Assembly: GCA_002269645.1 (NCBI GenBank)
Contig: NIVC01003514.1
Coordinates: 30,071-94,070, forward strand
Reading direction: 5' to 3'
Source: Macrostomum lignano
Taxonomy: Eukaryota
Length of the DNA: 64,000 bases
Shown here: one piece after another, positions 596 through 64,000 of the stretch
Position numbering within the stretch: position 1 is the stretch's first letter
Layout of the letters: the number at the start of each line of letters is the position of its first letter
Translations under genes and position numbers: made by a program
The notes under the pieces: generated by a model
Seen by the model: the letters and a program-made list of their open reading frames with translations, nothing else
Databases searched by the model: none
What the model was told of the DNA's origin: nothing

Positions 596-2595
<2,000 letters not shown>

Positions 2596-3699: not shown

Positions 3700-6253
3700 T
3701 TACAGCTGGCTAGTCAGGTGGCATGACTCTTCGTCATCCAACCGATTGCCGTCAAGTTCTGCAACCGCTCTGACGCTATCCGGCACCAGCTGAAGTCTGT
3801 GCTCAGTTGCGGCTTCTGTCTGTGAGCAGGAGCGCTGCAACCTGGCAGTTGTTGAGGCTGAGGTCATTACTCGCGTGTCTGCGCAGGTATGCGATCTGCG
3901 AATACAGGAGGATTGTATGAAGTGCGCAAAACATATTTTCGTTTGGATTATTTTAGAAGACGAAAGAAGAAAAAGTATATTTTTGTTTAAAATTACTTTT
4001 TTAATTTTCTCTCTTCCATGGGTTGCTATTAATTATTATTATACCTGACGTAGTCAGAAGTTGATGATGCTGCAAAAATAAAGAATACTTCCTAACATAT
4101 TGGGTCTGCAGGCGTGAATAAAAGAGGACATTCGGCGACGGAGAGTGACTCTAGGAGCGACACTGGGTGGTAGGGTGACAGTGGATAGTAGGGAGTGACA
4201 GTGAATGGTAGGGAGTGACAGTGGATGGTAGAGAGTGACAGTGGATAGTAGGGAGTGACAGTGGATGGTAGAGAGTGACAGTGAATGGTAGGGAGTGACA
4301 GTGGATGGTAGAGAGTGACAGTGGATAGTAGGGAGTGACAGTGGATGGTAGAGAGTGACAGTGAATGGTAGGGAGTGACAGTGGATAGTAGGGAGTGACA
4401 GTGGATGGTAGAGAGTGACAGTGGATGGTAGAGAGTGACAGTGGATGGTAGAGAGTGACAGTGGATGGTAGGGAGTGACAGTGGATGGTAGAGAGTGACA
4501 GTGGATGGTAGAGAGTGACAGTGGATGGTAGAGAGTGACAGTGGATGGTAGAGAGTGACAGTGGATGGTAGAGAGTGACAGTGGATGGTAGAGAGTGACA
4601 GTGGATGGTAGAGAGTGACAGTGGATGGTAGAGAGTGACAGTGGATGGTAGAGTGTGACAGTGAATGGTAGAGAGTGACAGTGGATGGTAGAGAGTGACA
4701 GTGGATGGTAGAGAGTGACAGTGGATGGTAGGGAGTGACAGTGAATGGTAGAGAGTGACAGTGAATGGTAGAGAGTGACAGTGGATAGTAGGGAGTGACA
4801 GTGGATGGTAGAGAGTGACAGTGGATGGTAGAGAGTGACAGTGGATAGTAGGGAGTGACAGTGGATGGTAGAGAGTGACAGTGGATAGTAGGGAGTGACA
4901 GTGGATAGTAGGGAGTGACAGTGGATGGTAGGGAGTGACAGTGGATAGTAGGGAGTGACAGTGGATGGTAGAGAGTGACAGTGGATGGTAGAGAGTGACA
5001 GTGGATAGTAGGGAGTGACAGTGGATGTTAGAGAGTGACAGTGGATGGTAGAGAGTGACAGTGGATGGTAGAGAGTGACAGTGGATAGTAGGGAGTGACA
5101 GTGGATGGTAGGGAGTGACAGTGGATGGTAGGGAGTGACAGTGGATGGTAGGGAGTGACAGTGGATGGTAGGGAGTGACAGTGGATGGTAGAGAGTGACA
5201 GTGGATGGTAGGGAGTGACAGTGGATGTTAGGGTGTGACAGTGGATGGTAGAGAGCGACAGTGGGTGGTAGGGAGTGACAGTGGATGGTAAGGAGTGACA
5301 GTGGGTGGTAGGGAGTGACAGTGGGTGGTAGAGAGTGACAGTGGATGGTAGAGAGCGACAGTGGATGGTAGGGAGTGACAGTGGATGGTAAGGAGCGACA
5401 GTGGATGGTAGGGAGTTACTTTAAGAGGAAGTTTAAAGTACCGTGAGAGAAAGGAACCAATTTAGTGCCTGTTCGGACACTGCACAGAAGACGTTGAACA
5501 ACTGAGTCCTGGAAGCGGTTCTCACCTGGTCAAACCGGTACTCTTGTCACCGCTCTCTCTGTCGAACACGACATCTGCAGCGCCCGCCCCATCATCCAGA
5601 GCAGACTGTGAGCACCGCAGAGTTCCAGCCAGCAGCAGCGACGCTCGCGAGTCTCTGGCGTGCGGATTCTGCAGCACGCCGACATCGGACGGCGGTTCTT
5701 CATCCGACGACTGGCATCGACGTACGCGTCGCTCGCCGCTCGACGCATCGACGCAGATCTGCAGGCGCGGCAGGCTGCACAGAGCCAGCGGAGTGTAGCA
5801 CAGTTCCGCCTCAGATCTCTGCCGCCAGCCGAAATAGCCCAGATCGATCTCTCGCTCCTCGCTCAAGAAGTCGCCCAACTCCAAATCGGAGTCGTCGGCA
5901 GCAATATCGTCGTCCTGGTCACTTTTCTGCAGCACAAAGACTGTGTTCTTCTTCTTGCAGAAGACGATGACCGCCGCTGTGAGGCTCATGCTGACAAACA
6001 GAAGGACACCGCCAATCACCAATACCCCGGCTAGGGATCTGTCGATGTGGAAGCTGGTCTCGGCCGAGTGCGAGCGAATCCCGCCTAAGCGATTCGAGCT
6101 GAACGCCGGGTGCCGTGGGTAGTACCGCTGCGGCGGCGGTGGCTGCGGAGGAGGAGGAGTTGCCGTTGTGCTCAGCATGGTGGGAAACTGCGACGAGTGT
6201 GCTGCTGCGACAGCTCTGCCCAGCAACGGTCCAGGAGTAGTCGTCGTCGTCAT
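3700..6253 (-). CDS. Uncharacterised single-pass membrane protein. Exons 6253-5526 and 3895-3700 (approx. 307 aa)
   Basis: ATG in ACAACCATG context just downstream of acceptor CCTACAG (6286-6285). Hydrophobic helix LAGVLVIGGVLLFVSMSLTAAVIVFC followed by KKK. Phase-2 donor CAG|GTGAGA at 5526/5525 joins acceptor TATTCGCAG| at 3896/3895 and stays open to TAA at 3702-3700. Confidence 0.65.
4180..5415 (+). repeat. 20-bp minisatellite (GAGAGTGACAGTGGATGGTA)n, about 60 copies, inside the intron of the membrane-protein gene
   Basis: Directly visible. Confidence 0.97.
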
Positions 6254-10722: not shown

Positions 10723-11809
10723 CCATAGACTAAAACAAAATCGGAGAGTCAAACTGCTGTACGAACGTACTGTAGCTATGGACTTAAATTTTGCTTGGGA
10801 AATCTATTGATACGTCATCAAACTGAGTAATTCAAGGTCAGATGTAACCAATGCCGGTCAAGACAAGATTACAAGTGTACTCGAAATTTTTGTTTCTATA
10901 TTGACATGCACCTCAGATACTATTTTGACATTTAAAATTGACGGAGTTTACAGAGAACTACTTTTTTCAAATTGCAAAATACTTGTATATAGTCTTGTAT
11001 ATATTTTCTCAGTTCGTTTCCCTTTCTCTCCAGCCAGGCCGGATTGGGAAAGTTAATAATGCTTAATGCTTTACTCAATATTTGCTTGGTCTTATATCTG
11101 TGTACACACCTTAGTGTTTATATGCAAACAATACATGGGGAAATGCCTATATGGGGACCTTGCCCCAGCTGCCCCTGCATAATTGATAAATTAAGTGCAG
11201 CCCTGAGAACTGAGACAGGAACGAGGGAGAGAGGGAGGGAGGGGAGATAGGGAAGAGAGTGAGGAGATGGAGTGAGCAGTTTAATACGCGGAAATACTTT
11301 ATTTTTCACCCAAATTTGCGACTGTCATATAGGCAACTTACTCATAGATTCCTTTGCTTTAGCTTCGAGACGCTAAGCTATAAGTGAGTTCGCTCGGCCT
11401 CATCTATATGCATTATTATAATTTTAGCTGAGAGCTGAGACCTGAGTCCGATAGAATTGTTCTACGAACCAATGATTTACAGCCTCTGTCAGTCTACTGA
11501 TTGACAGTTACCATAGTGGCCAACTGCTTCTGGCAGCGTGTTTGACCGAACTCGATCGCACTGAAGTGTCCTCCACTTGAAGTTATTGCCATTCCAATCT
11601 ATATTCTGCATTGCTCTTATTCTCCATTTTTATCTTCCCATAATATTTTGTCTCCCTATATATCTGAGTACTGTGCTTGCACTGAGCATTACAAAATCAA
11701 TATATCAGAACTGAGATGGATATCACATAAAATGACCCAGCTGGTAAAGTAAACAGCTCAGTACAATGTTGATACCAGAAAATTATTTTAACTTGCTACC
11801 GAAGCTCTA

Positions 11810-12625
11810 CTGTGACACCGAAGCTCAAATTGGATTGCTGTGACACCGAAGCTCAAAGTGGATTGCTGTGACACCGAAGCTCAAAGCGGATTGCTGTGAC
11901 ACCGAAGCTCAAATTGGATTGCTGTGACACCGAAGCTCAAAGTGGATTGCTGTGACACCGAAGCTCAAAGGGGATTGCTGTGACACCGAAGCTCAAAGTG
12001 GATTGTTGTGACACCGAAGCTCAAAGATGGTCTACTGTGACACCGAAGCTCAAAGATGGTCTACTGTGACACCGAAGCTCAAAGATGGTCTAACTGTGAC
12101 ACCGAAGCTCAAAGATGGTCTACTGTGACACCGAAGCTCAAAGATGGTCTACTGTGACACCGAAGCTCAAAGATGGTCTAACTGTGACACCGAAGCTCAA
12201 AGATGGTCTACTGTGACACCGAAGCTCAAAGATGGTCTACTGTGACACCGAAGCTCAAAGATGGTCTAACTGTGACACCGAAGCTCAAAGAGGGTCTACT
12301 GTGACACCGAAGCTCAAAGAGGGTCTACTGTGACACCGAAGCTCAAAGAGGGTCTACTGTGACACCGAAGCTCAAAGAGGGTCTACTGTGACACCGAAGC
12401 TCAAAGAGGGTCTACTGTGACACCGAAGCTCAAAGTGGATTGCTGTGACACCGAAGCTCAAAGTGGTCTGCTGTGACACCGAAGCTCAAAGTGGATTGCT
12501 GTGACACCGAAGCTCAGAGTGGATTGTTGTGATACCGAAGCTCAAAATGGATTGCTGTGACACCGAAGCTCAGAGTGGATTGTTGTGACACCGAAGCTCA
12601 AAGTGGATTGCTGTGACACCAAGAT
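11810..12625 (+). repeat. 28-30-bp minisatellite (TGTGACACCGAAGCTCAAAGTGGATTGC)n, about 28 copies, with a central block of the GATGGTCTAC variant
   Basis: Directly visible. Same family as 19575-21200. Confidence 0.95.
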
Positions 12626-19496: not shown

Positions 19497-19574
19497 ATCG
19501 CCAAAATGACCCAGATGGTATACATGAATAGCTCAGTACAATTCTGATACCATAAATGTTTATGACTTGAAGTT

Positions 19575-21200
19575 CAAATTGGATTGCTGTGACACCGAAG
19601 CTCAAAGTGGATTGCTGTGAGATGACACACAGAAGCTCAAAGTGGATTGTTGTGACAGAGAAGCTCAAAGGGGATTGCTGTGACACCGAAGCTCAAAGGG
19701 GATTGCTGTGACACCGACGCTCAAAGCGGATTGCTGTGATATGACACACAGGAGCTCAAATTGGATTGCTGTGACACAGAAGCTCAAAGTGGATTGTTGT
19801 GACACAGAAGCTCAAAGCGGATTGCTGTGATATGACACACAGGAGCTCAAATTGGATTGCTGTGACACCGAAGCTCAAAGTGGATTGCTATGACACCGAA
19901 GCTCAAAGGGGATTGATGTGACACCGAAGCTCAAAGTGGATTGCTGTGACACCGAAGCTCAAAGTCGATTGCTGTGACACCGAAGCTCAAAGGGGATTGA
20001 TGTGACACCGAAGCTCAAATTGGATTGCTGTGACACCGAAGCTCAAAGGGGATTGATGTGACACCGAAGCTCAAAGTCGATTGCTGTGACACCGAAGCTC
20101 AAAGTGGATTGTTGTGACACAGAAGCTCAAAGCGGATTGCTGTGATATGACACACAGGAGCTCAAATTGGATTGCTGTGACACCGAAGCTCAAAGTGGAT
20201 TGCTATGACACCGAAGCTCAAAGGGGATTGATGTGACACCGAAGCTCAAAGTGGATTGCTGTGACACCGAAGCTCAAAGTCGATTGCTGTGACACCGAAG
20301 CTCAAAGGGGATTGATGTGAAACCGAAGCTCAAATTGGATTGCTGTGACACCGAAGCTCAAAGTCGATTGCTGTGACACCGAAGCTCAAAGTCGATTGCT
20401 GTGACACCGAAGCTCAAAGGGGATTGATGTGAAACCGAAGCTCAAATTGGATTGCTGTGACACCGAAGCTCAAAGTCGATTGCTGTGACACCGAAGCTCA
20501 AAGGGGATTGATGTGACACCGAAGCTCAAAGTGGATTGCTATGACACCGAAGCTCAAAGGGGATTGATGTGACACCGAAGCTCAAAGTCGATTGCTGCGA
20601 CACCGAAGCTCAAAGTCGATTGCTGTGACACCAAAGCTCAAAGTGGATTGTTGTGACATCGAAGCTCAAAGTCGATTGCTGTGACACCGAAGCTCAAAGG
20701 GGATTGATGAGACACCGAAGCTCAAAGTGGATTGATGTGACACCGAAGCTCAAAGGGGATTGATGTGACACCGAAGCTCAAAGTCGATTGCTGTGACACC
20801 GAAGCTCAAAGTCGATTGCTGTGACACCGAAGCTCAAAGTGGATTGTTGTGACATCGAAGCTCAAAGTTGATTGCTGTGACACCGAAGCTCAAAGTGGAT
20901 TGTTGTGACATCGAAGCTCAAAGTTAATTGCTGTGACACCGAAGCTCAAAGTGGATTGTTGTGACACCGAAGCTCAAAGTCGATTGCTGTGACACCGAAG
21001 CTCAAAGTCGATTGCTGTGACACCGAAGCTCAATGTGGATTGTTGTGACACCGAAGCTCAAAGTCGATTGCTGTGACACCGAAGCTCAATGTCGATTGCT
21101 GTGACACCAAAGCTCAAAGGGGATTTCTGTGACACAAAAGCTCAAAGGGGATTTCTGTGACATGACACACCGAAGCTAAAAGGGGATTTCTTTTGACACC
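19575..21200 (+). repeat. 28-bp minisatellite (TGTGACACCGAAGCTCAAAGTGGATTGC)n, about 57 copies
   Basis: Directly visible. Variants AAGTCG, AGGGG and TTGG recur in higher-order blocks. Confidence 0.95.
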
Positions 21201-23913: not shown

Positions 23914-26279
23914 CCACTTGTCTACGACAGAATTCCTTCCCCACATCTCTATCTTACCAAATGGCAAGCACTGCATGCCATAGACAATTTAGATCTGCGC
24001 TGTACACTTCGAATTTCAAAACAGTTGCTTTATTATGGACAGGCAAGAAAACACTTTCTCAACAGGAGAAGTGACATCTTTGACTGGAGAATAGTCTATG
24101 GCCAACCTAGAAAAAAGGCAAGAGGGAGGGAATACAGGCATGAAAAGTTAACTGCAAGAATTTTTACTGGTGCCTCCTTAGCTCACCACCCCAACTTACC
24201 AAATCTTACAATGCAAGCGGTCAGACAGCGACGGCAAGCAGCCAAGCAAGCCTTGCGAAACTTGGGCCTCGACAGCGAATCGAGCGATGAGTCGAGCGAT
24301 GACTCATTTTTCACTGCCGAGAGCGAGGGAGAGGACGGTGACGAAAATCAAGAAGGCAACGATGGACCGGAGGAAGACGATCAGGGAATGATGCACGATG
24401 ATTGGAGATCAGTAACTCCAGAGACTGATGCTCGAGCTAATTCCCTTCCCGAGTTCCTCGGGGCAAGCGGAGTCAATCCGGGATTCTCCGTACCTGCTGA
24501 TGTTGACGACGGCTGGACAGCCATTTTCGAGCAATTTTTACCCGATGAGTTGCTGCTTCAGATGTGCATGTGGACAAACAAGAGAGCGCAGCTGGATATT
24601 GCCAAGTTTCAAGAAGAACACGGAGATGATGAACTGCCTTACGGGCTCAGAACGTGGAAGCCCTGCACTGTTTCTGAGATGAAGAAGGTGATCGGCGTTA
24701 TATTATATACCGGAGTTGTACAGAAACCGGAGGTGACGGCTTACTGGTCCACGGACCCGTTTTACTTTCATCCCTACTTTCAAAGCATGAAGATGCTTCC
24801 TCGCTCGCGGTTTCAACAAATCATGTCATGGCTGCGTTGCTATGACTGTCTTGACTTCGACGCTGGTGATCCCTTGTGCAAGATCAGGCCGTTCCTAGAC
24901 ATGGTCCAGACAGTTTGCAAGAACAGCTACATGCCCGGTCAAAGCATTGCCGTTGATGAAGCGCTGCTGCTCTATAAAGGGAGGCTGATTTTTAAGCAGT
25001 ACATGCCCAACAAGAGAGCCAAGTTTGGCATCAAATTGTACTGCCTTGCAGAGTCTTCTACAGGCTACATGTGGAACTATCTGATACATTCAACCACCAT
25101 TGCGAATGAACAGTTCGGCAACGATGTGCCGCAGCTCTCAATCAGTGAGAGAGTCGTCGTAGAACTTTGTCGCGACATTCTGGACCTTGGATATCGGGTC
25201 TTTTGCGACAGTTGGTTTTCATCGGTGCGACTGGCCAAGTTCCTTCTGACCAGAGGAACAACCTTAACTGGGACCGTTCGCAAAGACCGAGGCGTTCCAC
25301 CGATTCTGCGAGATATGCTCTTGCAACCACCGAGTCATTCCTTTGCCCGACATGGTGACATCCTTGCTGTGAAGCTGGTTGACAGGCGAAGCTCAGGAAC
25401 AAAGACGGTCTATCTGTTGGACTCCGCTTCAACGGCTGCTAGCTCTTTGGTTAGCCGGGTACTGCGCGGTGGTGTGGAGCAGCAGCTGCTGAAGCCCAAC
25501 TCGGTTTTGCAATATAATCACAACATGGGAGGTGTGGATCGGATGGATGCCGCAGCCCAGCCTTACAGCGCATGCCGCCGAACGCACAAATGGTTCGTAA
25601 AGTTGGCGGTGTTTCTGCTACAGCAGCTGGTTCGCAACTCCTGGATTGTGTACCGACATCTAGGTGGATCCATGAGCTTTCTCAGCTACACTGAAAGGTG
25701 TGTAAAGCACTTGATTGAAAGCAGCGGAAATGGTCGATCGAGAGTTAAGCGTCAGGCTCTTCCCCGTCAGCCAGGCGAAATTCATCATCGGCTGGAAAAG
25801 CTACCCGCTACCGCAGCACAAGAACGGCCTACCAAGCGTTGCCGAGTTTGTTACCAGCGCAGACTGAAAAAGCGGACCGTCTACTTCTGCCAAGACTGTG
25901 ACGGTCAGCCTGGGCTTTGCCTGGAGCCGTGCTTCTTTGAGTGGCACTCGGCTAACTGATTGCTGGCGCTTTGCTGAAACTGTAATCGAACTGTTGCTAA
26001 AATTATTTTCATTCACTTGCATGCAGCTTCATTTGCCCTTATGTTCTTAAGATTTACCTTTGTGCATGCAATGTATGTCGTTTTCTATTTGTTTTGTGAC
26101 ACTCCGACGCAGTATGACAATACAAACAGTTTTTTGGCCTTGGCATGCATAGCATTCCATTTGGTTGAGTCAGACAATGATTCTGTCTAAACTCGCTTTC
26201 CCATCGACTTCAAATCTGTCTATGGTCAATTGACAGAATGAACGATGGCATGCACAGCATGCCACTGGTAATCATAAGG
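23914..26279 (+). mobile_element. piggyBac DNA transposon, full length, inserted at TTAA
   Basis: TTAA at 23910-23913 and 26280-26283. The paralogous empty site near 21520-21560 (GGGTTAGGCATTTCAAAGGCAAC) is colinear once the element is removed. Terminal repeats are degenerate (CCACTTGTCTACGA vs CCTTATGATTACCA), with subterminal TTACCA..TGGCA..TGCATGCCAT inverted matches. Confidence 0.85.
24025..25959 (+). CDS. piggyBac transposase (PGBD4-like), probable ATG at 24211
   Basis: DDD triad IAVDE / FCDSWF / GGVDRMD, KRAKFGIKLY motif, acidic N-terminus and C-terminal Cys-rich domain CRVC...CQDC...LCLEPCFFEWH. Confidence 0.92.
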   Translation: MLYYGQARKHFLNRRSDIFDWRIVYGQPRKKARGREYRHEKLTARIFTGASLAHHPNLPNLTMQAVRQRRQAAKQALRNLGLDSESSDESSDDSFFTAESEGEDGDENQEGNDGPEEDDQGMMHDDWRSVTPETDARANSLPEFLGASGVNPGFSVPADVDDGWTAIFEQFLPDELLLQMCMWTNKRAQLDIAKFQEEHGDDELPYGLRTWKPCTVSEMKKVIGVILYTGVVQKPEVTAYWSTDPFYFHPYFQSMKMLPRSRFQQIMSWLRCYDCLDFDAGDPLCKIRPFLDMVQTVCKNSYMPGQSIAVDEALLLYKGRLIFKQYMPNKRAKFGIKLYCLAESSTGYMWNYLIHSTTIANEQFGNDVPQLSISERVVVELCRDILDLGYRVFCDSWFSSVRLAKFLLTRGTTLTGTVRKDRGVPPILRDMLLQPPSHSFARHGDILAVKLVDRRSSGTKTVYLLDSASTAASSLVSRVLRGGVEQQLLKPNSVLQYNHNMGGVDRMDAAAQPYSACRRTHKWFVKLAVFLLQQLVRNSWIVYRHLGGSMSFLSYTERCVKHLIESSGNGRSRVKRQALPRQPGEIHHRLEKLPATAAQERPTKRCRVCYQRRLKKRTVYFCQDCDGQPGLCLEPCFFEWHSAN

Positions 26280-26292
26280 TTAAGCATTATAA

Positions 26293-29682
<3,390 letters not shown>

Positions 29683-37929: not shown

Positions 37930-38348
37930 GGCGGCGGGCAAATTGTCTGGCGGGCAAATTGTCTGGCGGGCAAATTGTCTGGCGGGCAAATTGTCTGGCG
38001 GGCAAATTGTCTGGCGGGCAAATTGTCTGGCGGGCAAATTGTCTGGCGGGCAAATTGTCTGGCGGGCAAATTGTCTGGCGGGCAAATTGTCTGGCGGGCA
38101 AATTGTCTGGCGGGCAAATTGTCTGGCGGGCAAATTGTCTGGCGGGCAAATTGTCTGGCGGGCAAATTGTCTGGCGGGCAAATTGTCTGGCGGGCAAATT
38201 GTCTGGCGGGCAAATTGTCTGGCGGGCAAATTGTCTGGCGGGCAAATTGTCTGGCGGGCAAATTGTCTGGCGGGCAAATTGTCTGGCGGGCAAATTGTCT
38301 GGCGGGCAAATTGTCTGGCGGGCAAATTGTCTGGCGGGCAAATTGTGG
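37930..38348 (+). repeat. 16-bp minisatellite (GGCGGGCAAATTGTCT)n, about 26 near-perfect copies
   Basis: Directly visible. It explains six overlapping spurious ORFs. Confidence 0.97.
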
Positions 38349-43741: not shown

Positions 43742-46700
43742 ATGAAGTTTTTAGTGATCTTTAAAGACGACCGTCAAATTGTTGAGGTCTCGGAAAGCGA
43801 AGTGAAGCTTCCTGAAGGCTTTCAAAACCTTAAGGAAGAGGAATGGTTAGAAAAGAGGGACTCCACTGAGAAGTGGAAGTGTGAAGCCTTGTATGAAGGC
43901 TGTTTTTACTCTGCTCTAATTATTCAGGTAAGCAACCGATCCCAACGATTGAAATGTTAAAATTCTTGAATCGATCTAATATTTGTACGCTCATATTTTC
44001 TCATTAATTTAAAGGTAATACTAAGCAACAACCTAGAGCCTGGGAGCTTCCGCTTTGTGCGTGAATTGGTGGCCAAAAAGACCCGACTGAACCGAATTCT
44101 CGAGTTGGTTCAACCCAGAGTCTTTCAGGAGCGTGACATGAAGAAAGCACGAAGGCATTACCAGACTAAGGTAAAATTAAGCACAGCCCATATAATTTTT
44201 ATCGAGAACTTTGTTTTCTCCGTTTTACCTTTTAAACTATTTTTTAAGAAAAGGGAAGAAATTAAATGTGAAAATAATCTTTAAAACTGACATTAACTTG
44301 ATAATTTCTCATGCCGTAACCATCCCAAACAGAATCTGTCAGACGGCTCAGCCACCGATTCCGAGGCAATCTTCGAAGATAAGAGCAGCCGCTGTTTGCA
44401 ACCTCCAGCTTTGCTGCCTAAACAACATCCGCCTACGATTGCACAGTTAGCGCCAATGCCTCCTATTAGTGATGATGAAGCAGAAGCTGGCGTAGACGCC
44501 GATATGGAAGCTGAGGCGGAAGCTGAGGCGGAAGCTGAAGTGGAAGCTGAGGCGGAAGCTGAAGTGGAAGCTGAGGCGGAAGCTGAAGCGGAAGATGAGG
44601 TGGAAGCTGAGATCGGAGCTGAGGTGGAAGCTGAGATGGGAGCTGAGGCGGAAGCTGAGGCGGAAGCTGAGGTGGAAGCTGAGATGGGAGCTGAGGTGGA
44701 AGCTGAGGCGGAAGCTGAAATAGAAGCTGAGTTCGTAGCAGATGATCGATCGACGATTCCTAAGTCGCCTCCCACCATTTCATCTTTTAATTTTGGTTCT
44801 GGCTTTCTTAGAAAACTAGAAGAGCAGATCCAAGCCGGTGTTAGCTTTGAGCTGGAAAGTCCAAGAGGCATCAAGTTTCTGTCCTTATATGCCCTACGCG
44901 AACTTACTATGCGCAAGAATGAATTGAAAGCATTAGAAAATAGTTTGACCAAACAAATCACCGCAATGCGCACTGAAGTGCAGAGCGTGCTACGCTTTTT
45001 GGAACCTGTTGGCGCTGACATTCCAACTGATAATTCTGAGCCTTCATTCTGGCCGATCAACTCCTGGGAAAAATATGTGCAATTCGCTTCCAGTCCAAAT
45101 GAACATATTTCTACTTTGGTAAGTTCATGACAGAGTTTTTTATTTTCTTTTCATTAGAAGAAATGCTCTAACTACTACTCAAAGCGCACTAGTACTATCA
45201 CTGAAATAATAATCTATAAGTATTCTCACCTGTAAAAATCTAAACAGAAGAGCCTGCTACGTTCATGCAAGCGAGACAAGTGGTCCGATGCTTTAATGGC
45301 AATGCTTAACGAGAGCTTGTCGAAAGAGATGCAGGCGGTTATTAATTTAATCGGGTCAGACATGCGAAGCCGAGCTGTTGCTGCTGGAGTTGCGACCAAC
45401 CTTACTGATGCGCAGCTTGGATTTCAGAGCACTCTGCTCAGCCATTTCCAAAGTAAGTCTACTTAATCAACGTTCAATGAGACTTTTAGAGCTAAATATC
45501 AAGAAATTAGTCGAGCACAGTGCATGCTATTCATAGTAACTTTCAACTTTTTTCCTAACAGAAGCAATCACATTCATCTATGGCGCGACCGCTGAAGCCG
45601 GCAGGCCCTCTGAACAATCTGTAAGAAATACTTGCAGACAGCAGCTAAAGCATGGCGGTGACCGATTAAAGGGGCGGTCGCATCGCACAGGAAGCCAGCT
45701 GCTTTCCGGAGTCCAGACTCAAAGCCCCGCTTCTGACAGCGCCGTACAAAGACAGTCTCTGGTGGCAGCGACTCCAAGCCCCGCTTCTGGCAGCGCCGTA
45801 CAAAGACAGTCTCTGGTGGCAGCGACTCAAAGTCCCGCTTCTGGCAGCGCCGTACAAAGACAGTCTCTGGTGGCAGCGACTCCAAGCCCCGCTTCTGGCA
45901 GCGCCGTACAAAGACAGTCTCTGGTGGCAGCGACTCAAAGTCCCGCTTCTGGCAGCGCCGTACAAAGACAGTCTCTGGTGGCAGCGACTCCAAGCCCCGC
46001 TTCTGGCAGCGCCGTACAAAGACAGTCTCTGGTGGCAGCGACTCCAAGCCCCGCTTCTGGCAGCGCCGTACAAAGACAGTCTCTGGTGGCAGCGACTCAA
46101 AGTCCCGCTTCTGGCAGCGCCGTACAAAGACAGTCTCTGGTGGCAGCGACTCCAAGCCCCGCTTCTGGCAGCGCCGTACAAAGACAGTCTCTGGTGGCAG
46201 CGACTCCAAGCCCCGCTTCTGGCAGCGCCGTACAAAGACAGTCTCTGGTGGCAGCGACTCCAAGCCCCGCTTCTGGCAGCGCCGTGCAAAGACGGTCTTT
46301 GGTGGCAGCGACTCAAAGTCCCGCTTCTGGCAGCGCTGTGCAAAGACGATCTCTGGTGGCAGCGACTCAAAGTCCCGCTTCTGGCAGCGCCGTGCAAAGA
46401 CGGTCTTTGGTGGCAGCGACTCAAAGTCCCGCTTCTGGCAGCGCCGTGCAAAGACACAGCCATTCATCTTCTTTTTCCCTAGTGAGTAAAAACGTATCTA
46501 AACTGAATAATGAACGATGAATACTATGATTGCTAAGCATTAAATACTACTATCAGTAAGATAAAATGTGCATGCAGTAATTTTTTGTTTTCTTTCCAAT
46601 GTCACAGACACCATCGCGACTATCAGCGGGAGAAGTGCCGCCAGCGGCGACAGCAAAGCCGAGCTCCCAATCCAGAAAGCGAGCGAGTATTCAGTTGGAT

Positions 46701-57284: not shown

Positions 57285-59095
57285 ATCTTCCAATATACTA
57301 AAAATGAGTTGTCTGTATGTATGTATGTGTGAGATAGATTTCAGAAAAAACGGCTTAATCAATTTTCTTTAAACTTGCACCATTTGATCAGAAATTTTTC
57401 TGGGACGGTACATGCATCTTGGCTAAGAAATTGCTCAATTTTAAGAAGCGTAATATCAAACATAGAAGAGCCACCATGTCAAACATTAAAGAGCCACCAT
57501 ATCAAATATAAAAGAGTTACCATGTCAAACATAAAAAAGCCACCATGCCAAACATAAAAGAAGCACCATGTCAAACATATACGTGACTCCATGTCAAACA
57601 TTTAAGAGCCACCATGTCGAACATTTAAGAGCCACCATGTCAAACATTTAAGAGCCACCATGTCAAACCTAAATGAGCCACCACGTCTAACATTTAAGAG
57701 CCACTATGTCAAACATTTAAGAGCCATCATGTCAAACATTTAAGAGCCACCATGTCAAACATATATGTGACTTTATGTAAAACATTAAAGAGCCACCATT
57801 GTGAACATTAAAGAGCCACCATGTCGAACATTAAAGAGCCACCATGTCAAACATAAAAAGGTATACCATGAAGAACATTGAAGAGCCACCATGTCAAACT
57901 TTAAAGAGTCACCATTTCGAACATTAAAGAGCCACCATGTCGAACATTAAAGAGCCACCATGTCGAACATTAAAAAGCCACCATGTCAAACATTGAAGAG
58001 CCACCATGTCAAACATTAAAGAGCTGCCATGTCAAACATAGAAGAGCCACCATGTCAAACATAGAAGAGCCACCATGTCAAAATTAAACAGCTACTTTGT
58101 AGAACATTAAAGAGCCGCCGTGTCAAACATAAAAGAGCCACCAGGTTAAACATTAAAGAGCCACCATGTCAAACATAGAAGAGCCACCATGTCAAACATA
58201 GAAGAGCCACCATGTAAAACATAGAAGAGCCACCATGTCAAAACATAAAAGTGCCATCATTTCAAACATAGAAGAGCCACCATGTCAAACATAGAAGAGC
58301 CACCATGTCAAAGATTTAAGAGCCACAATGTCAAACATATATGTGACTTTATGTCAAACATTAAAGAGCCACCATCTCAAACATTAAAGAGCCACATTTT
58401 TAATTTCAAACATTAAAAAGCCACCATTTCGAACATTAAAGAGCCACCATGTCAAACATTAAATAGCCACCATGTCAAACATAAAAGAGCCACCATGTCA
58501 GACATTAAAAAGCCACCGTATCAAACATAAAAGAGTTACCATGTAGAACAAAAAACAGCCACCATGTCGAACATAAAAGAGCCACCATGAAGAACATAAA
58601 AGAGCCACCATGAAGAACATTAAACAGCCACCATGTCAAAGATTTAAGAGCCACCATGTCAAACTTATGTGACTTTATGTCAACATTAAAGAGCCACCAT
58701 TTCGAACATTAAAGAGCCACCATGTCAAACATTAAATAGCCACCAGGTCAAACATAAAAGAGCTATACCATGAAGAGCATTAAAGAGCCACTTTGTCGAA
58801 CATTAAAGAGCCACCATGTCAAACCTAAAAGAGCCAACCATGTCTAACATAAAAGAGCCACCATGTTAAACATTAAAGAGCCACCATGTCAAACATAGAA
58901 TAGCCACCATGTCAGACATTGAAAAGCCACCATATCAAACATAAAAGAGTTACCATGTAGAACATGAAAGAGCCACCATGTCAAACATTAAAGAGCCACC
59001 ATATCAAACATAAAAGATACACAATTTCAAACGTAAAAGTAAGCGAATTTTAAAGGAGCCACTATAATGCTAAGGAAATTGTCGCACTAGCTACT
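57285..59095 (+). mobile_element. Possible Helentron-associated non-autonomous element (HINE/DINE-like) with an expanded central tandem repeat
   Basis: Head ATATACTAAAAATGAGTTGTCTG(TATG)n...GATTTCAGAAAAAACGGCTTAATCAATTTTCTTTAAACTTGCACC, with a second copy of this head at approx. 50090-50170. The head is followed directly by the 23-bp array. Confidence 0.4.
57465..59020 (+). repeat. 23-bp minisatellite (GAGCCACCATGTCAAACATTAAA)n, about 65 diverged copies
   Basis: Directly visible, period 23 (e.g. 57606 to 57629). Confidence 0.95.
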
Positions 59096-59535: not shown

Positions 59536-59579
59536 TTTATTAGCTTTTATTAAAAAACTAATTAAAAAGACCTGAATTA

Positions 59580-60530
59580 TGGCGCTAGATAAACCAAGGA
59601 TTACTGCACTTGATAAACCAAAAATTATTGCACTTGATAAACCAAGAATTACTGCGCTTAATAAACCAAGGATTATTGCACTTGATAAACCAAGGACTAC
59701 TGCACTTGATAAACCAATGATTACTGCGCTTGATAAACCAAATAATATTGCACTTGATAAACCAAGGATTACTGCACTTGATAAACCAAGGATTACTGCG
59801 CTTGATAAACCAAGGATTACTATGCTTTACAAACTAAGGATTATTGCACTTGATAAACCAAGGATCACTTCGCTTGATAAATCAAGGAATATTGCACTTG
59901 ATAAACCAAGGATTATTGCACTTGATAAACGAAAGATTACTGCACTTGATAAACCAAGGATTATTGCACTTGATAAACCAAGGAATTTTGCACTTGATAA
60001 ACCAAATATTACTGCACTTGATAAACCAAGGATTACTGTGCTTGATAAACTAAGGATTATTGCACTTGATAAAGCAAGGATTACTGCGCTTGATAAACCA
60101 AGGATTACTGCGCTTGATAAACCAAGGATTATTGCACTTGATAAGCCAATGATTATTGCACTTGATAAGCCAAGGATTATTGCACTTGATAAACCAAGGA
60201 CTACTGTAAGGATTTTTGCACTTGATAAACCAAGGATTATTGCACTTGATAAGCCAAAGATTACTGCGCTTGATAAACCAATGATTATTGCACTTGATAA
60301 GCCAAAGATTACTGCGCTTGATAAACCAAAGATTATTGCACTTGATATGCCAAAGATTACTGCGCTTGATAAACCAAGGATTATTGCACTTGATAAGCCA
60401 ATGATTATTGCACTTGATAAGCCAAAGATTATTGCATTTGATACACCAAGGATTATTGCACTTAATAAGCCAAAGATTACTGCGCTTGATAAACCAAGGA
60501 TTATTGCACTTGATAAGCCAATGATTATTG
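59580..60530 (+). repeat. 24-bp minisatellite (ATTGCACTTGATAAACCAAGGATT)n, about 40 copies
   Basis: Directly visible. It underlies ORF 59579..60580. Confidence 0.95.
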
Positions 60531-60647
60531 TTCCCTTTTGTCTATGGTTTCCGGCATTCATACTTGCGGTAACAATTTAATTGTTTGTCGGCTTTTTTCG
60601 ATTGTTGCCGGATTTCAGACGAATGTATTTGGCTATCAAAACAAGGA

Positions 60648-63600
60648 CACAGTGTATTTCTTTGGTAAGATTTTTTGAAAAAAATGGCCACTCAAGATTT
60701 TTACTATCATTAATAGATCACATTTTTCTAGAGAGGAAGCCACAATATTAAAAAAATCTGTCGAGCGGTTGCTGAGTAACTACTGTTTTTCTGTTTTTCA
60801 TGCTGTTTCATGCTGTTTTCATTTTTTTGCTTTGATACAGGTTATAATAGGCAAATTGGTATCAAAAACGTTATTCAATGTTTTTCTTTCAACATTAATA
60901 AATTATATTATTAGTATAAATTTAAAGAATGCTTGTACAATATAAAAACTTTCAGCTTGAAACGTAGTTGTACAATGTCAATATAAATTACACATTAGGA
61001 GTGAAAACAATGTCAAAGTCCACACTGACTACATGTCCTACACATGTCGGCTATTATAATGACGCACAGCCTGAAGCAAACGACTTCCAAAGCTGGGATT
61101 TTCTACATCCTTGACCTTGAAGTTCGCCCATAGCTGCTGAAAGTCGTGGTGCACTGCTTCAGATGCCTGTTCACTCCAGGGACCAAGTCCTCGCTGTTGC
61201 ATCAAACAGAACTGTGGCACATGATGCAGCACTGTGTGAACTTTCGGTGTCACTGAGATCCCGAGGTCCATGAACGTCACTTGAAAATCAGCGATCGTCT
61301 GCTGGAAATTGGAGGCCAGTTCATTGCCAAAGCAGCTGGACACAACAAGCCTGAAGCAGCGCAGTGCAGCAACGTACGGCAAGCACTGTAGCGGGCACAT
61401 CGATGCCAGAGCATCAACATTCTGCAGGAGCACTTTGCAGCTGTTGCCGGTAAAACTGCCTCCGTGAATTGCCTCCCTGGCGACGTGGCAGTGATGCAGC
61501 CATCTGTCACACTCTGGCCACACTGACTGCATACTACAGTAAATGGTATTTACTACTCCAGTTAGCAGGTGCAGTTCGGGCGGTGGTACAATTTCTAGGA
61601 CCATTGTTGAGGCTGGGAAATTTTCTAGAAGACAGGGACGTACCACATTTCCAAAATTCTTGGCAGCTGCAAGCTTGGAGCCAGAAGCCTGGAAGTTTGC
61701 ATGGCTGTCTTCGAGAAGCTTCAGTGTGCGATCTGTGCCCTTCTGCAATAGCTTATTCTTGTGGGCATCGCACCAGCAGCAGGGATGAGCAGCACTGTGA
61801 GCCATAAGCCCAAGCAGCATGTTGCACAGCTTTAAGTCGCTAGCGATGGTAAATTTGCCTTGAAGACTGCTCAGTCCAGCTGCCCTCCACAGCAACTCCA
61901 GGTTCTGGTAATTTTCTTGAATGGCTGGTGCGATGGCTACAATAAGAATTCGTTTAACACCGGAGTGCTTTAGCCGACTGCTGCGAGAGTTGCTGCTACA
62001 GGCTGCCTGTGAAGGCTCAGTGGAGTCAACACACCAACTGGAATCAAACACAGACAGGCAGATCTTGAAGAACCCACCACCTCCATCAATGCCAACCTTA
62101 ATCATACAGGTCGATGGGTTCAGTTGTCTTTCTTGAATAATTCGCTTGAGAAGCTGCTGAATGCGCACACAAATAACAGCTGGACGTGATGTTACTTCTG
62201 TCACAACTCCTCGCTCCATGTTGACGAAGTCCAACTGTTGTAGTTCAAAAAAGCTGTCGAGCTGGTGGTGAATGTCAGACAGCTTTTGTTGGAGGTACGA
62301 CTCTACAGCTGTTTTTGAACCCGACGCTGCTCTAATATGGTGAGCCAGCTTCAGCATAGAGCGCGTGCTGAGGCCCATATCCTGCTGAATGCTCACCATG
62401 CTGCTGACGCTCAGCTGCTGTGGTTGCTTCGGCGTACTCTGAGATGGTGGCTCCACTTCCATGTAAAAGCCTTCTGCATTATGTGCCCTTGTAGCAGGAG
62501 TACAGACATGTGACTTGCCTCGATTTAGCTGCGAGAGGCACTTCACACAGAGCTTCATGCTGACTGGGCGTCGAGTTTTTGACACAGTGCTGGCAGTGGG
62601 CTCGCAAACAATCCTACTTTGACTGTCAGCGCTTGGCCTTCCTCGTGGTCGCCGATTAACTGCTGCTGGATGTCCAAAGTTTGCGGAGCTTTCTCTGGCA
62701 GCCTGACACACAATACAGTTGCATCGAGTAGCTGCTCGGCTTCGTGTTCGAGGAGGCTGGGCTCCAATCTTAGAGTGGTCGAAGTCGGGCAGCGAGGACG
62801 AAAAGTTTCCTTTCTCGTACTCTAGCAGCGTTATCCTGCATTTTGTGCACAGAGCACTTGGTAGCCGATTGTCCTGCGTATCGTAGCCATGCATCTTGAA
62901 CTCTGAGATGAGTGACTGCATGTGCTCATTTATCCGGCGCATTTCCTTGCCCTTATGCATGCAGATGAGGCAGACGATGAGACGAGCATCTTCGTGCGTT
63001 CTGGCACTGCTGCTTTTACTCATAATGCCTAACACTGAGCGTGCTTGGTGTCGATTAAGAAAGGTGCTACACAACAAATCTGATATGTAATGAGACGCAG
63101 AGATTGTGCAATGAATATAAAAACTTCTCTAGTTAGATTAAAGTGAAATCAATCGATAAGAGCGACTTATATATATTCATTGATTGCTGAGCAGACAAGT
63201 TTTTAGCTCAGCAAACTTGTGTGCATTGCGCAATGTATAGCACACTATTTGATTGAGTAATAGATGAGTGACTGCGTTCTTCAACTCCAAATCATGCACA
63301 CACAGTCTCCCCTCAATAGAGAAGTAGTACAGTTAGTACAAAACCTATTTGTTACATTCAATCACACAATTGTACCCTGTATTTTTGGAACATTCATTTT
63401 GATTAGCATATGAAATGTGTGTAAAAAACAGCCTATTTGTTGGCTAAACAAATGGACCTTAAGCTTATAAGTGATTTTCTGTTTGAACTAGAAAAACAAA
63501 AACAAATAGCACGAAACAGCATAAAACAGCATTAAAAACAGAAAAACAGTAGTTTCTTAGCAACTGCTTGATGGATTTTTTAAAGTCTTGTAGCATTCTC

Positions 63601-63684
63601 TCTGGACATACATGATCTATTGATGATAGTAAAAATCTGGGGTGGCCATTTTTTCAAAAAATGTCACCATAGAAATACACTGTG
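60648..63684 (-). mobile_element. Complete Chapaev-like (CMC, RAG1/Transib-related) DNA transposon, 3,037 bp
   Basis: Imperfect TIRs of about 170 bp both start CACAGTGTATTTCT. 4-bp TSD AGGA at 60644-60647 and 63685-63688. It encloses a single intact transposase ORF. Confidence 0.88.
61038..63077 (-). CDS. Chapaev/RAG1-related DDE transposase (probable ATG at 63023, approx. 661 aa)
   Basis: N-terminal Cys/His clusters (CLIC...CTKC, CNCIVC, CVKC...HVC). Core motifs VGIDGGGGFFK (D), ASDLKLCNMLLGL...HPCCWC (D and C2C), PPPELHL, HGGSFTGNSC, TPKVHTVLHHV (H3H) and WSEQASEAVHHDF (E). Confidence 0.88.
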   Translation of the reverse strand: MLCSTFLNRHQARSVLGIMSKSSSARTHEDARLIVCLICMHKGKEMRRINEHMQSLISEFKMHGYDTQDNRLPSALCTKCRITLLEYEKGNFSSSLPDFDHSKIGAQPPRTRSRAATRCNCIVCQAARESSANFGHPAAVNRRPRGRPSADSQSRIVCEPTASTVSKTRRPVSMKLCVKCLSQLNRGKSHVCTPATRAHNAEGFYMEVEPPSQSTPKQPQQLSVSSMVSIQQDMGLSTRSMLKLAHHIRAASGSKTAVESYLQQKLSDIHHQLDSFFELQQLDFVNMERGVVTEVTSRPAVICVRIQQLLKRIIQERQLNPSTCMIKVGIDGGGGFFKICLSVFDSSWCVDSTEPSQAACSSNSRSSRLKHSGVKRILIVAIAPAIQENYQNLELLWRAAGLSSLQGKFTIASDLKLCNMLLGLMAHSAAHPCCWCDAHKNKLLQKGTDRTLKLLEDSHANFQASGSKLAAAKNFGNVVRPCLLENFPASTMVLEIVPPPELHLLTGVVNTIYCSMQSVWPECDRWLHHCHVAREAIHGGSFTGNSCKVLLQNVDALASMCPLQCLPYVAALRCFRLVVSSCFGNELASNFQQTIADFQVTFMDLGISVTPKVHTVLHHVPQFCLMQQRGLGPWSEQASEAVHHDFQQLWANFKVKDVENPSFGSRLLQAVRHYNSRHV

Positions 63685-64000
63685 AGGAACAACAATAGCA
63701 ACACGGCGAAAGTGTTTCATAGTCACAAAAAGTTCTTAAGAACAAACCGATCGAATCAATTGTTTTACTTTCCGTAAAAGTTGAATGTGCAGTTGTGGAA
63801 CTGACCACCACAGAGGCTTTTCGGCAGGTCTTGGCCGCCCTCGGGTGCTTTCATCAGCTCGCCTCTATCAGACCCAGTTGTCACACTTCCGATGGTGGAT
63901 TCCGCATCGTCGTCAATCTACGAAGGGACGTTCGATCAAAGTATGCGCGAATTGTTTGCATGTCGTCCTCGAAATAGCTTCGTATTTGTCTACCTTCTCT

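What the first reader, a model, noticed from the sequence alone, without database searches (positions are those of the whole stretch)
60648..63684. Complete RAG1/Transib-related (Chapaev-like) transposon whose TIRs start with the perfect RSS heptamer CACAGTG
Both ends begin CACAGTG, identical to the V(D)J recombination signal heptamer. Each is followed by exactly 23 bp and then an A-tract (AAAAAAATG left, AAAAAATGG right, matching 6/9 and 5/9 of the nonamer ACAAAAACC). The element has a clean 4-bp TSD (AGGA), which fits Chapaev rather than the 5-bp TSD of Transib/ProtoRAG. The uninterrupted transposase has an N-terminal Cys/His region and a TPKVH..HV / SEQASE C-terminus reminiscent of RAG1-family proteins. 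There is no RAG2-like gene and no 12/23 asymmetry. It is a potentially active relative that could inform how RSS-like ends and RAG1 domains evolved.
Basis: partly seen in the sequence, partly recalled or inferred. Interest (0 to 1): 0.8.

Follow-up and report, generated by a model that had tools for sequence, protein, structure and literature searches.

The report
Intact Chapaev transposon with RSS-like ends
This is a complete 3-kb "cut-and-paste" jumping gene of the already described Chapaev group, whose enzyme has the same fold as the antibody-gene recombinase RAG1 and whose ends have the same layout as the signals RAG1 cuts; it is a good specimen of a known kind, not a new kind.

Summary
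Window 60648-63684 is a 3,037-bp element. It has inverted ends that both start CACAGTG, a perfect 4-bp duplication (AGGA) and one uninterrupted 661-codon gene on the minus strand.

The interpretation also holds.
- **Fold:** the predicted structure (pLDDT 86) significantly matches only RAG1, amphioxus RAG1-like and HzTransib among solved structures.
- **N-terminus:** the Cys/His region matches published "Chapa domain" fragments of Repbase Chapaev-2_HM, Chapaev-1_AA, Chapaev-1_HM and Chapaev-5_HM at 36-68 bits. Chapaev3 fragments score under 5 bits and human RAG1 about 0.
- **Published hallmarks:** all are present, namely a 3-4 bp TSD, CAC...GTG termini and the C(2)C, LH and H(4)H motifs.
- **Relatives:** four elements with 27-41% identical transposases also have 4-bp TSDs.

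Among these relatives only CAC is invariant, so the exact RSS heptamer is probably chance. An A-rich block about 23 bp further in is kept in four of six lineages while the spacer drifts. This is the layout already described for Transib ends.

Chapaev and its link to RAG1 are published, so I file this as a new member of a known kind. Mobility is untested, only one copy was seen, and the host organism is unknown.

The parts
60644..60647 (.). Left copy of the 4-bp target-site duplication, AGGA
   Evidence: Read directly. It is identical to 63685-63688, and the fifth base out differs.
60648..60833 (+). Left terminal inverted repeat, about 186 bp
   Evidence: the repeat finder pairs I1-I3. Gapped alignment with the right end gives 87% column identity.
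60648..60654 (+). Terminal heptamer CACAGTG. CAC is invariant in the six related lineages examined.
60655..60677 (+). 23-nt spacer. This stretch is variable among relatives (30% mean pairwise identity).
60678..60686 (+). A-rich nonamer-like block AAAAAAATG. It matches the published Transib TIR nonamer AAAAAAATC at 8/9 and the RSS nonamer at 6/9.
   Evidence: 76% mean pairwise identity among four lineages. Transib consensus from PMC1131882.
60796..60828 (+). Subterminal run of about 10-nt repeats (CATGCTGTTT-like) inside the left TIR. It is mirrored at 63494-63526 and may be an additional transposase-binding site (inferred).
   Evidence: the repeat finder I4/I12; alignment columns 170-195
61038..63023 (-). 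Transposase gene. It is a single exon of 661 codons plus a stop (ATG 63023-63021, stop 61040-61038).
   Evidence: ORF list. Homologues align over 93-100% of its length. It keeps the family residue at 96 of 101 columns that are at least 85% conserved.
62706..62996 (-). N-terminal Chapa-type zinc-finger domain (residues 11-107: H-x7-CxxC ... P-x3-CxxC ... CxCxxC)
   Evidence: The family N-terminal profile scores 68, 52, 46 and 36 bits against the Chapaev-2_HM, -1_AA, -1_HM and -5_HM fragments from Additional file 5 of PMC4411706.
62634..62645 (-). RGRP AT-hook-like motif (residues 128-131). GRP is conserved in most homologues. I propose, by inference, that it reads the A-rich block.
   Evidence: Alignment A1; motif position. 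The function is inferred by analogy with the GGRPR motif of the RAG1 nonamer-binding domain (my own knowledge).
62502..62549 (-). Small CxxC...HxC zinc knuckle (residues 160-175)
   Evidence: C160 and C163 are nearly invariant in A1; positions.
62085..62087 (-). Predicted catalytic Asp D314, in GIDGGGG on the first strand of the RNase H-like fold
   Evidence: Invariant column in A1. Strand 307-316 in the model. Codon checked.
61836..61838 (-). Predicted catalytic Asp D397, in SDLKL just after the fourth strand
   Evidence: Nearly invariant. Aligned by hhalign to the invariant D658 of sea-urchin RAG1-like.
61770..61781 (-). C(2)C motif, C416 and C419 in HPCCWCD. These are zinc ligands equivalent to the RAG1 CxxC pair.
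   Evidence: The motif is named as a Chapaev/CMC hallmark in PMC4079192 and PMC12730594.
61572..61577 (-). LH motif (L485, H486) within PPPELHLL
   Evidence: Nearly invariant in A1. Chapaev hallmark per PMC4079192.
61221..61238 (-). H(4)H motif, H597 and H602 in PKVHTVLHHVP. These are zinc ligands equivalent to the RAG1 HxxxxH pair.
61158..61160 (-). Predicted catalytic Glu E623, in WSEQASEAVH
   Evidence: Aligned by hhalign to E914 of sea-urchin RAG1-like, in the conserved SGEGNE motif. Codon checked.
63499..63684 (-). Right terminal inverted repeat. Read as reverse complement: heptamer 63684-63678, spacer 63677-63655, A-rich block AAAAAATGG 63654-63646.
63685..63688 (.). Right copy of the 4-bp target-site duplication, AGGA

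Best explanation
The region is one complete autonomous DNA transposon of the Chapaev group. Yuan and Wessler place Chapaev in the CMC assemblage, and Kapitonov and Koonin place it in the Transib superfamily. Within Chapaev it belongs to the RING-less subgroup that contains Repbase Chapaev-1_AA and Chapaev-1, -2 and -5_HM.

Its single gene encodes a 661-residue DDE transposase with the RAG1/Transib fold.
- Predicted catalytic residues: D314, D397 and E623.
- Predicted zinc site: C416, C419, H597 and H602.
- N-terminal to the core: a Chapa-type zinc finger, an RGRP AT-hook-like motif and a small zinc knuckle.

Proposed mechanism, inferred from RAG1 and HzTransib and not shown for any Chapaev:
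1. The transposase binds each end through two contacts, the terminal CAC heptamer at the active site and the A-rich block about 23 bp further in.
2. It pairs the two ends and nicks exactly at the CAC/flank border.
3. The freed 3'-OH of the flank attacks the other strand, leaving a hairpin on the flank and a blunt transposon end.
4. The two transposon 3'-OH ends then join into target DNA 4 bp apart. Repair of that stagger gives the 4-bp duplication seen here.

Shown here: the element's anatomy, the 4-bp TSD in five elements, the fold, the motif set, the match to Chapaev N-termini, and the conservation pattern of the ends.

Inferred: the chemistry, which protein module reads the A-rich block, and current activity.

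The confidence given (0.88) is for the identification as a Chapaev-type transposon with a RAG1-fold transposase. The mechanistic steps are less certain, at about 0.6.
For: - Anatomy: the TIRs, TSD and single ORF are all in place.
- Fold: the AlphaFold model has pLDDT 86 and pTM 0.70. Its only significant PDB matches are RAG1, BbRAGL and HzTransib.
- Sequence profile: hhalign against a RAG1-like alignment aligns 230 columns, from the second Asp through CxxC and HxxxxH to the catalytic Glu (E 2.6e-4, probability 42%).
- Chapaev hallmarks listed in PMC4079192 are all present.
- N-terminal profile against published Chapa-domain fragments scores 36-68 bits for the Chapaev-1_AA/HM subgroup, under 5 bits for Chapaev3, and about 0 for human RAG1.
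- Relatives have 4-bp TSDs and CAC termini: L006 AAAA, L036 TTTC, L037 ACAC, L042 TAAT.
- End architecture: CAC is 6/6. Among four lineages the spacer is 30% identical and the block at 31-39 is 76% identical.
- Family and gene state: the family is large, with 3,932 cluster representatives at E <= 0.001. The gene keeps 96 of 101 conserved columns.
Against: - Only one copy was seen, with no empty site and no polymorphism, so mobility and activity are not shown.
- The two TIRs differ at about 13% of positions.
- The protein lacks a stretch of roughly 35-40 residues that most homologues have between the zinc knuckle and the following helical domain (alignment columns 320-400).
- Sequence-level similarity to RAG1 is weak. 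There is no PDB hit by phmmer or by profile. hhalign probability is only 42%. Homologues have no precomputed RAG1 Pfam hits, whereas RAG1-like proteins have six or more.
- The comparison with Repbase Chapaevs covers only N-terminal fragments taken from a machine-read PDF. The catalytic cores of reference Chapaevs were not available.
- The A-rich block is absent in the beetle element L037 and shifted by 2 nt in L042.
Confidence: 0.88

Rival explanations
1. The RSS likeness is coincidental. The element is an ordinary Chapaev whose ends need only CAC plus generic AT-rich subterminal sequence. On this view the exact heptamer, the 23-bp distance and the A-tract have no specific role.
For: - Heptamer positions 4-7 vary freely among relatives: AGTG, GGTG, CCCG, CCCT, CCTG, GGTA.
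- The ends are AT-rich and carry other A-runs, for example near position 102.
- L037 has no A-tract at the site, and in L042 it is shifted by 2 nt.
- Only six lineages were sampled, and some share ancestry in their ends.
Against: - In four lineages whose transposases are only 36-41% identical to the window's, the first A-rich 7-mer starts at positions 30-34. Each 200-nt end holds only one to three such clusters.
- The block at 31-39 is 76% identical, while the spacer before it is at the level of unrelated sequence, 30%.
- L006 and L042 align from position 35 inward but not across the spacer.
- The same layout is the published consensus of 21 Transib families (PMC1131882).
Confidence: 0.3
2. 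It is a canonical Transib, or a RAG-like (ProtoRAG-type) transposon, rather than a Chapaev.
For: The best structural matches are RAG1, BbRAGL and HzTransib. The ends have the heptamer-23-nonamer layout described for Transib.
Against: - The TSD is 4 bp here and in four relatives, not 5 bp.
- There is no RAG2-like gene.
- There is no sequence-level hit to HzTransib or RAG1 chains.
- Homologues have no RAG1 Pfam domains, unlike RAG1-like proteins.
- The N-terminus matches Chapaev fragments, and canonical Transib has no such domain (PMC4411706).
Confidence: 0.03
3. It belongs to another CMC branch: Chapaev3, EnSpm/CACTA or Mirage.
For: All of these share CAC/CA termini and the C(2)C and H(3-4)H motifs (PMC12730594). 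One homologue (P0061) carries Pfam PF06918, a domain of unknown function.
Against: - Chapaev3 makes a 3-bp TWA duplication (PMC4079192 and PMC3014272). The five TSDs here are 4 bp and are not TWA.
- Chapaev3 Chapa-domain fragments score under 5 bits, against 36-68 bits for the Chapaev-1_AA/HM group.
- By my own knowledge of the Repbase classification, EnSpm makes 3-bp and Mirage 2-bp duplications, and EnSpm elements are much larger. The papers read here give only a 2-4 bp range for CMC and 3 bp for EnSpm.
Confidence: 0.04
4. It is a dead or domesticated copy: a former transposon that no longer moves, or a host gene derived from one.
For: Only a single copy was seen. The TIRs have diverged by 13%. 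The protein has a roughly 35-40-residue deletion relative to homologues. The exact protein is not on record in the public collection.
Against: - The TSD is perfect, both ends are intact, the frame is open over the full length, and 96 of 101 conserved columns are kept.
- A domesticated gene would not be expected to keep matched TIRs and a TSD.
- Left and right TIRs need not be identical in an active element.
Confidence: 0.35

Closest known systems
[quoted passage not shown]
   Same: - The N-terminal Chapa zinc-finger pattern is the same and lacks a RING finger (36-68 bits).
- The ends are CAC...GTG and the TSD is 4 bp, within the published 3-4 bp range.
- The C(2)C, LH and H(4)H motifs are present.
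- The transposase is encoded by a single exon.
   Different: It is not the same family. The nearest proteins found are 45-46% identical, and the N-terminus clearly differs from the Chapaev-1_AA fragment. The catalytic cores and ends of the Repbase references could not be compared.
Transib transposons, including HzTransib (PDB 6pqn, 6pqr, 6pqx, 6pqy)
   Same: - The overall fold is shared (Foldseek E 8e-7 to 3e-4).
- The DDE triad with CxxC and HxxxxH zinc ligands is shared.
- The end layout is CAC heptamer, 23-bp spacer, A-rich nonamer. AAAAAAATG here compares with the AAAAAAATC consensus.
- Both ends are of the 23 type, as in most Transib families.
   Different: The TSD is 4 bp rather than 5 bp. 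This element has an N-terminal Chapa domain, which canonical Transib lacks. Its TIRs are much longer, about 186 bp against about 38 bp. No sequence-level hit was found.
RAG1 core and invertebrate RAG1-like (ProtoRAG / BbRAGL, sea-urchin and starfish RAG1L)
   Same: - These are the best structural matches, with about 600 aligned columns and E down to 3e-12.
- The catalytic and zinc residues align.
- The heptamer is identical to the RSS consensus.
- The published alignment places the Chapa domain against the RAG1 N-terminus.
   Different: There is no RAG2-like partner gene, no RING finger and no 12/23 asymmetry. The TSD is 4 bp. No RAG1 Pfam domains were detected. The N-terminal profile does not score against human RAG1.
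Chapaev3 (Merrow, Garfield, Conan; Zhang et al. 2014)
   Same: CAC termini, the CMC motif set and a related N-terminal zinc finger.
   Different: Chapaev3 makes a 3-bp TWA duplication, has short TIRs of 11-19 bp in Anolis, and has smaller transposases of about 485-560 residues. Its Chapa-domain fragments score under 5 bits.

Membership tests
Chapaev (as summarised by Zhang et al. 2014, PMC4079192) | Target-site duplication of 3-4 bp | tested here: met
   AGGA here. AAAA, TTTC, ACAC and TAAT in four related elements, each with the fifth base differing.
Chapaev (as summarised by Zhang et al. 2014, PMC4079192) | Inverted repeats with invariable 5'-CAC ... GTG-3' termini | tested here: met
   Both ends here, and all six related lineages.
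Chapaev (as summarised by Zhang et al. 2014, PMC4079192) | DDE transposase with the C(2)C, LH and H(4)H motifs | tested here: met
   D314, D397, E623; C416-x2-C419; L485-H486; H597-x4-H602. All lie in conserved columns of A1.
Chapaev (Kapitonov and Koonin 2015, PMC4411706) | N-terminal Chapa zinc-finger domain | tested here: met
   hmmsearch of the family's N-terminal profile against the published fragments gave Chapaev-2_HM 68 bits, -1_AA 52, -1_HM 46 and -5_HM 36. The fragments came from a machine-read PDF and contain some errors.
Chapaev | Catalytic core clusters with reference Chapaev transposases (Repbase / RepeatPeps) in a phylogeny | not testable with these tools
   No Repbase, Dfam or RepeatPeps library is at hand. 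Only N-terminal fragments were available from a supplement.
Chapaev3 | 3-bp TWA target-site duplication | tested here: not met
   Five of five TSDs are 4 bp, and none is TWA.
Transib | 5-bp target-site duplication | tested here: not met
   4 bp. The definition comes from PMC1131882 and the 2026 preprint.
Transib | Ends made of a CAC heptamer, a variable spacer of about 23 bp and an A-rich nonamer | tested here: met
   compared with the consensus CACAATG-23-AAAAAAATC.
Transib / RAG1 | Recognisable sequence similarity of the roughly 600-residue core | tested here: inconclusive
   The fold match is strong. By sequence there is only hhalign E 2.6e-4 at probability 42% over 230 columns. There is no phmmer or hmmsearch hit to PDB RAG1/Transib chains, and homologues have no RAG1 Pfam hits.
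RAG-like transposon (ProtoRAG type) | Convergent RAG1-like and RAG2-like gene pair inside the element | tested here: not met
   The TIRs enclose a single plausible ORF. The other ORFs of at least 60 aa overlap it.
hAT | 8-bp TSD and a Hermes-like fold | tested here: not met
   The TSD is 4 bp, and no hAT structure appears among the Foldseek hits.

The most novel reading that the evidence does not exclude
The two-part end layout (terminal CAC heptamer, spacer of about 23 bp that is free to vary, conserved A-rich block) is not special to Transib and RAG signals. It is also conserved in a large Chapaev clade that makes 4-bp duplications. If so, it predates the Chapaev/Transib split and is read by an ancestral AT-hook plus helical module. 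This intact copy, which carries the exact RSS heptamer, would then be a working enzyme for testing that idea and for testing whether a RAG2-less, 4-bp-stagger relative can act on RSS substrates.
Probability: 0.3. Interest if true: 0.6.

Novelty: new member of a known kind. Interest (0 to 1): 0.35.

Why it matters
As far as I know, no Chapaev transposase has been studied biochemically. All mechanistic knowledge of this fold comes from RAG1/2, ProtoRAG and one Transib.

An apparently intact Chapaev with clean ends gives a concrete substrate-enzyme pair. The comparison of six lineages suggests that the heptamer-spacer-nonamer layout of V(D)J signals is older than Transib itself. That would move the origin of the RSS layout one branch deeper, and it is directly testable.

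The existence of Chapaev, its RAG1-like core motifs and its RAG1-like N-terminus are already published. The element itself therefore adds an example, not a concept.

Tried and rejected
- Sequence searches against solved structures found nothing relevant, whether with the single protein or the family profile; the profile search returned only weak tropomyosin noise.
- NCBIfam found nothing.
- hhalign of the family against a single starfish RAG1-like sequence gave the expected alignment but no usable statistic (probability 1.7%). Replacing the single sequence with a 24-sequence RAG1-like alignment improved this.
- The metagenome scan returned 26 loci, but almost all contigs stop inside the inverted repeats, so they gave no termini.
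- L029 has an internal inverted repeat without CAC ends or a TSD, and I set it aside.
- L040 and L041 showed no inverted repeats, and L035 starts too close to the gene.
- The right flank of L007 is cut after 3 nt and does not match the left flank, so it was not used for the TSD count.
- A BLAST of known ends against all loci found no further ends.
- Scans of prokaryotic genomes and viral contigs found no relatives.
- The exact protein is not on record, so neither the host organism nor the copy number could be established.
- hAT, EnSpm, Mirage, Chapaev3, canonical Transib and ProtoRAG were each considered and rejected on TSD length, gene content or domain match.
Full report
**1. The observation**

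The region was read directly. The element spans 60648-63684 (3,037 bp).
- Both ends begin CACAGTG when each is read inward.
- Each heptamer is followed by exactly 23 nt and then an A-run: AAAAAAATG on the left (60678-60686) and AAAAAATGG on the right (reverse complement of 63646-63654).
- AGGA lies immediately outside both ends. The next base out differs, so the duplication is exactly 4 bp.
- The 19-nt terminal sequence occurs only at these two places in the window, against 0.07 expected.
- The pattern CACAGTG-N21-25-AAAAAA also occurs only there, against 0.05 expected.
- CACAGTG alone is not enriched: 6 found, 8.2 expected.

- The inverted repeats are long, about 186 bp (60648-60833 and 63499-63684) at about 87% identity with a few indels. 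They contain a short run of about 10-nt subterminal repeats (60796-60828, mirrored at 63494-63526).
- The gene is on the minus strand, with its ATG at 63023 and its stop at 61040-61038, giving 661 codons. No other ORF in the element looks real, so there is no RAG2-like gene.

**2. What the protein is**

By sequence alone the protein matches nothing in the PDB or NCBIfam. It does belong to a very large family.
- There are 70 cluster representatives in the word-indexed search, aligned over 93-100% of the length for the full-length ones.
- There are 3,932 representatives at E <= 0.001 in the exhaustive search, the nearest 45-46% identical.
- Almost none carry a Pfam annotation.

The alignment (A1) shows the following conserved columns:
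- an invariant Asp in GIDGGGG (D314);
- a nearly invariant Asp in (A/S)TDLKL (D397);
- HPCxWCD (C416, C419);
- PPPELHL (L485, H486);
- PKVHxxxxH (H597, H602);
- WSEQxSE.

The window's protein keeps the family residue at 96 of 101 columns that are at least 85% conserved. The exceptions are the artificial first residue, one gap and three conservative changes. It does lack roughly 35-40 residues that most homologues have between the second zinc knuckle and the next helical domain.

An AlphaFold2 model built on A1 is confident (mean pLDDT 86, pTM 0.70). Its strand-helix order places D314 on the first strand and D397 just after the fourth strand of an RNase H-like fold.

Foldseek against the PDB returned 36 hits at E <= 0.001. 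Every one is mouse or zebrafish RAG1 core (best E 3e-12, about 600 aligned columns), amphioxus BbRAGL (1e-6) or HzTransib (8e-7 to 3e-4). The next hit has E 0.1. No hAT or other transposase appears.

For a sequence-level test I took the starfish RAG1-like protein printed in Additional file 2 of PMC4411706. I used it to collect real RAG1-like proteins, aligned 24 of them (A3) and ran hhalign against A1. The result is E 2.6e-4 and probability 42% over 230 columns. The aligned residue pairs, against sea-urchin RAG1L numbering, are:

| This protein | Sea-urchin RAG1L |
|---|---|
| D397 | D658 |
| C416 / C419 | C677 / C680 |
| H597 / H602 | H886 / H891 |
| E623 | E914 |

By my own knowledge of mouse RAG1 numbering, these correspond to D708, C727/C730, H937/H942 and E962. 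The sequence signal is thus modest but lands on exactly the functional residues, and the structural signal is strong.

**3. Which family**

Zhang et al. 2014 (PMC4079192) summarise the Chapaev hallmarks as a 3-4 bp TSD, invariable 5'-CAC ... GTG-3' termini, and the motifs C(2)C, LH and H(4)H. All are present here.

Kapitonov and Koonin 2015 (PMC4411706) add an N-terminal "Chapa" zinc-finger domain shared with the RAG1 N-terminus. Their Additional file 5 prints that domain for Repbase Chapaev, Chapaev3, RAG1 and RAG1L sequences. I rebuilt those fragments and searched them with a profile of the first 190 residues of this family.

| Fragment | Score (bits) |
|---|---|
| Chapaev-2_HM | 68 |
| Chapaev-1_AA | 52 |
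| Chapaev-1_HM | 46 |
| Chapaev-5_HM | 36 |
| Sea-urchin RAG1L | 14 |
| Chapaev-1_ACa | 10 |
| Chapaev-1_BF | 6 |
| Chapaev3 fragments | under 5 |
| Chapaev-1_NV | about 0 |
| Human RAG1 | about 0 |

The element therefore sits in the RING-less Chapaev subgroup that contains the mosquito and Hydra families.
- It is not Chapaev3, which makes a 3-bp TWA duplication.
- It is not canonical Transib, which makes a 5-bp TSD and has no N-terminal domain.
- It is not a RAG-like transposon, because it has no RAG2-like gene.

The catalytic cores of reference Chapaevs were not available, so the phylogenetic placement of the core remains untested.

**4. Related elements and the ends**

I fetched contigs carrying homologues and located their inverted repeats with a script.

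| Locus | Protein, identity to window | Ends begin | TSD |
|---|---|---|---|
| L006 | P0022, 36% | CACCCCT | AAAA |
| L036 | P0031, 41% | CACCCCG | TTTC |
| L037 (beetle *Brassicogethes aeneus*) | P0069, 27% | CACGGTA | ACAC |
| L042 | P0053 | CACCCTG | TAAT |
| L007 | P0011, 40% | CACGGTG | not usable (right flank cut) |

All five TSDs, counting the window's, are exactly 4 bp.

Only CAC is invariant in the heptamer, so the identity with the RSS consensus heptamer is specific to this element and is probably chance.

The A-rich block behaves differently.
- In the window, L007, L036 and L006 the first A-rich 7-mer starts at positions 30-34 from the tip. Each 200-nt end holds only one to three such clusters.
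- Among these four lineages the mean pairwise identity is 62% in the heptamer, 30% in the spacer and 76% in positions 31-39.
- L042 has the block shifted by 2 nt, and L037 lacks it.
- L006 and L042 are alignable from position 35 inward but not across the spacer.

This is the pattern Kapitonov and Jurka 2005 described for 21 Transib families: CACAATG, a variable 23-bp spacer, then AAAAAAATC (PMC1131882). The left block here matches that nonamer at 8 of 9 positions.

In the paper library searched, only one paper contains both "Chapaev" and "heptamer", and it does not address this point. I could not read the Repbase Reports that first described Chapaev, so I do not claim the feature is unreported.

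**5. Mechanism**

From the fold and the conserved residues, I propose RAG1/Transib-type cut-and-paste chemistry.
1. The enzyme nicks at the CAC/flank border.
2. A hairpin forms on the flank, leaving a blunt transposon end.
3. The two ends join into a target with a 4-bp stagger.

This is inferred from homology. No Chapaev enzyme has been assayed, to my knowledge.

I further suggest that the conserved RGRP motif (residues 128-131), together with the helical domain that follows, reads the A-rich block. The analogy is with the GGRPR motif of the RAG1 nonamer-binding domain, which I cite from my own knowledge. This is the weakest step.

**6. Comparison and verdict**

Kojima 2025 (PMC12730594) notes that EnSpm, Mirage, Chapaev, Transib and RAG1 all share the C(2)C and H(3-4)H motifs, CA...TG termini and 2-5 bp TSDs. 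A RAG1-like core is therefore expected for any member of this assemblage.

The element is a new member, probably a new family, of a known superfamily.

Activity is open. The gene and ends look intact, but only one copy was seen, the two ends differ by 13%, and the host genome could not be identified. No relatives exist in the prokaryotic or viral collections.

Interest is moderate to low. The main value is as a candidate for the first biochemical study of a Chapaev enzyme, and as a hint that the RSS-type end layout predates Transib.

Noticed in passing
window 24025-25959 (+): A 644-residue ORF matches piggyBac-family transposases. phmmer gives E 1e-51 to the piggyBat transposase (9c0f) and 2e-34 to 6x67. 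This is a second, unrelated DNA transposon gene in the window. Its ends and TTAA duplication were not examined.
   Followed up: partly
window 26581-27843 (+) and 27791-29680 (+): Two further long ORFs (420 and 629 residues) lie next to the piggyBac-like gene. The 629-residue ORF has no sequence match in the PDB. Their nature is unknown.
   Followed up: partly
window 2-599, 1212-1697, 4155-5416, 11806-12620, 19569-21162, 37933-38346, 45716-46456, 57456-59039, 59576-60530 and others: The window is unusually rich in long minisatellite arrays with unrelated units of 16-54 bp. More than 20 separate arrays were found. One array with a 24/48-bp unit (59576-60530) ends about 120 bp before the left end of the transposon. 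It produces the spurious ALDKPRI-repeat ORFs on both strands.
   Followed up: no
window 11806-12620 and 19569-21162: Two arrays share essentially the same 28-bp unit (GAAGCTCAAAG..TG..TGTGACACC) but lie 7 kb apart. This suggests a duplicated or split satellite block.
   Followed up: no
L037 (Brassicogethes aeneus OV121138.1, locus 3260-6078): A 2.8-kb related element in the pollen beetle has CACGGTA ends and a 4-bp TSD (ACAC). It has no A-rich block at the 23-bp position. Its annotated protein (P0069, 381 aa) is a fragmentary gene model.
   Followed up: partly
protein P0061 (homologue): It is the only homologue of the 70 to carry PF06918, which by my own knowledge is DUF1280. P0070 is the only other homologue with any Pfam hit (C2H2 zinc-finger families). 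The PF06918 hit suggests that this domain of unknown function was built from transposases of this assemblage.
   Followed up: no
window 60796-60828 and 63494-63526: Short tandem repeats of about 10 nt (CATGCTGTTT-like) sit about 150-180 bp inside each end in inverted orientation. They resemble the subterminal repeats of CACTA-type elements.
   Followed up: no
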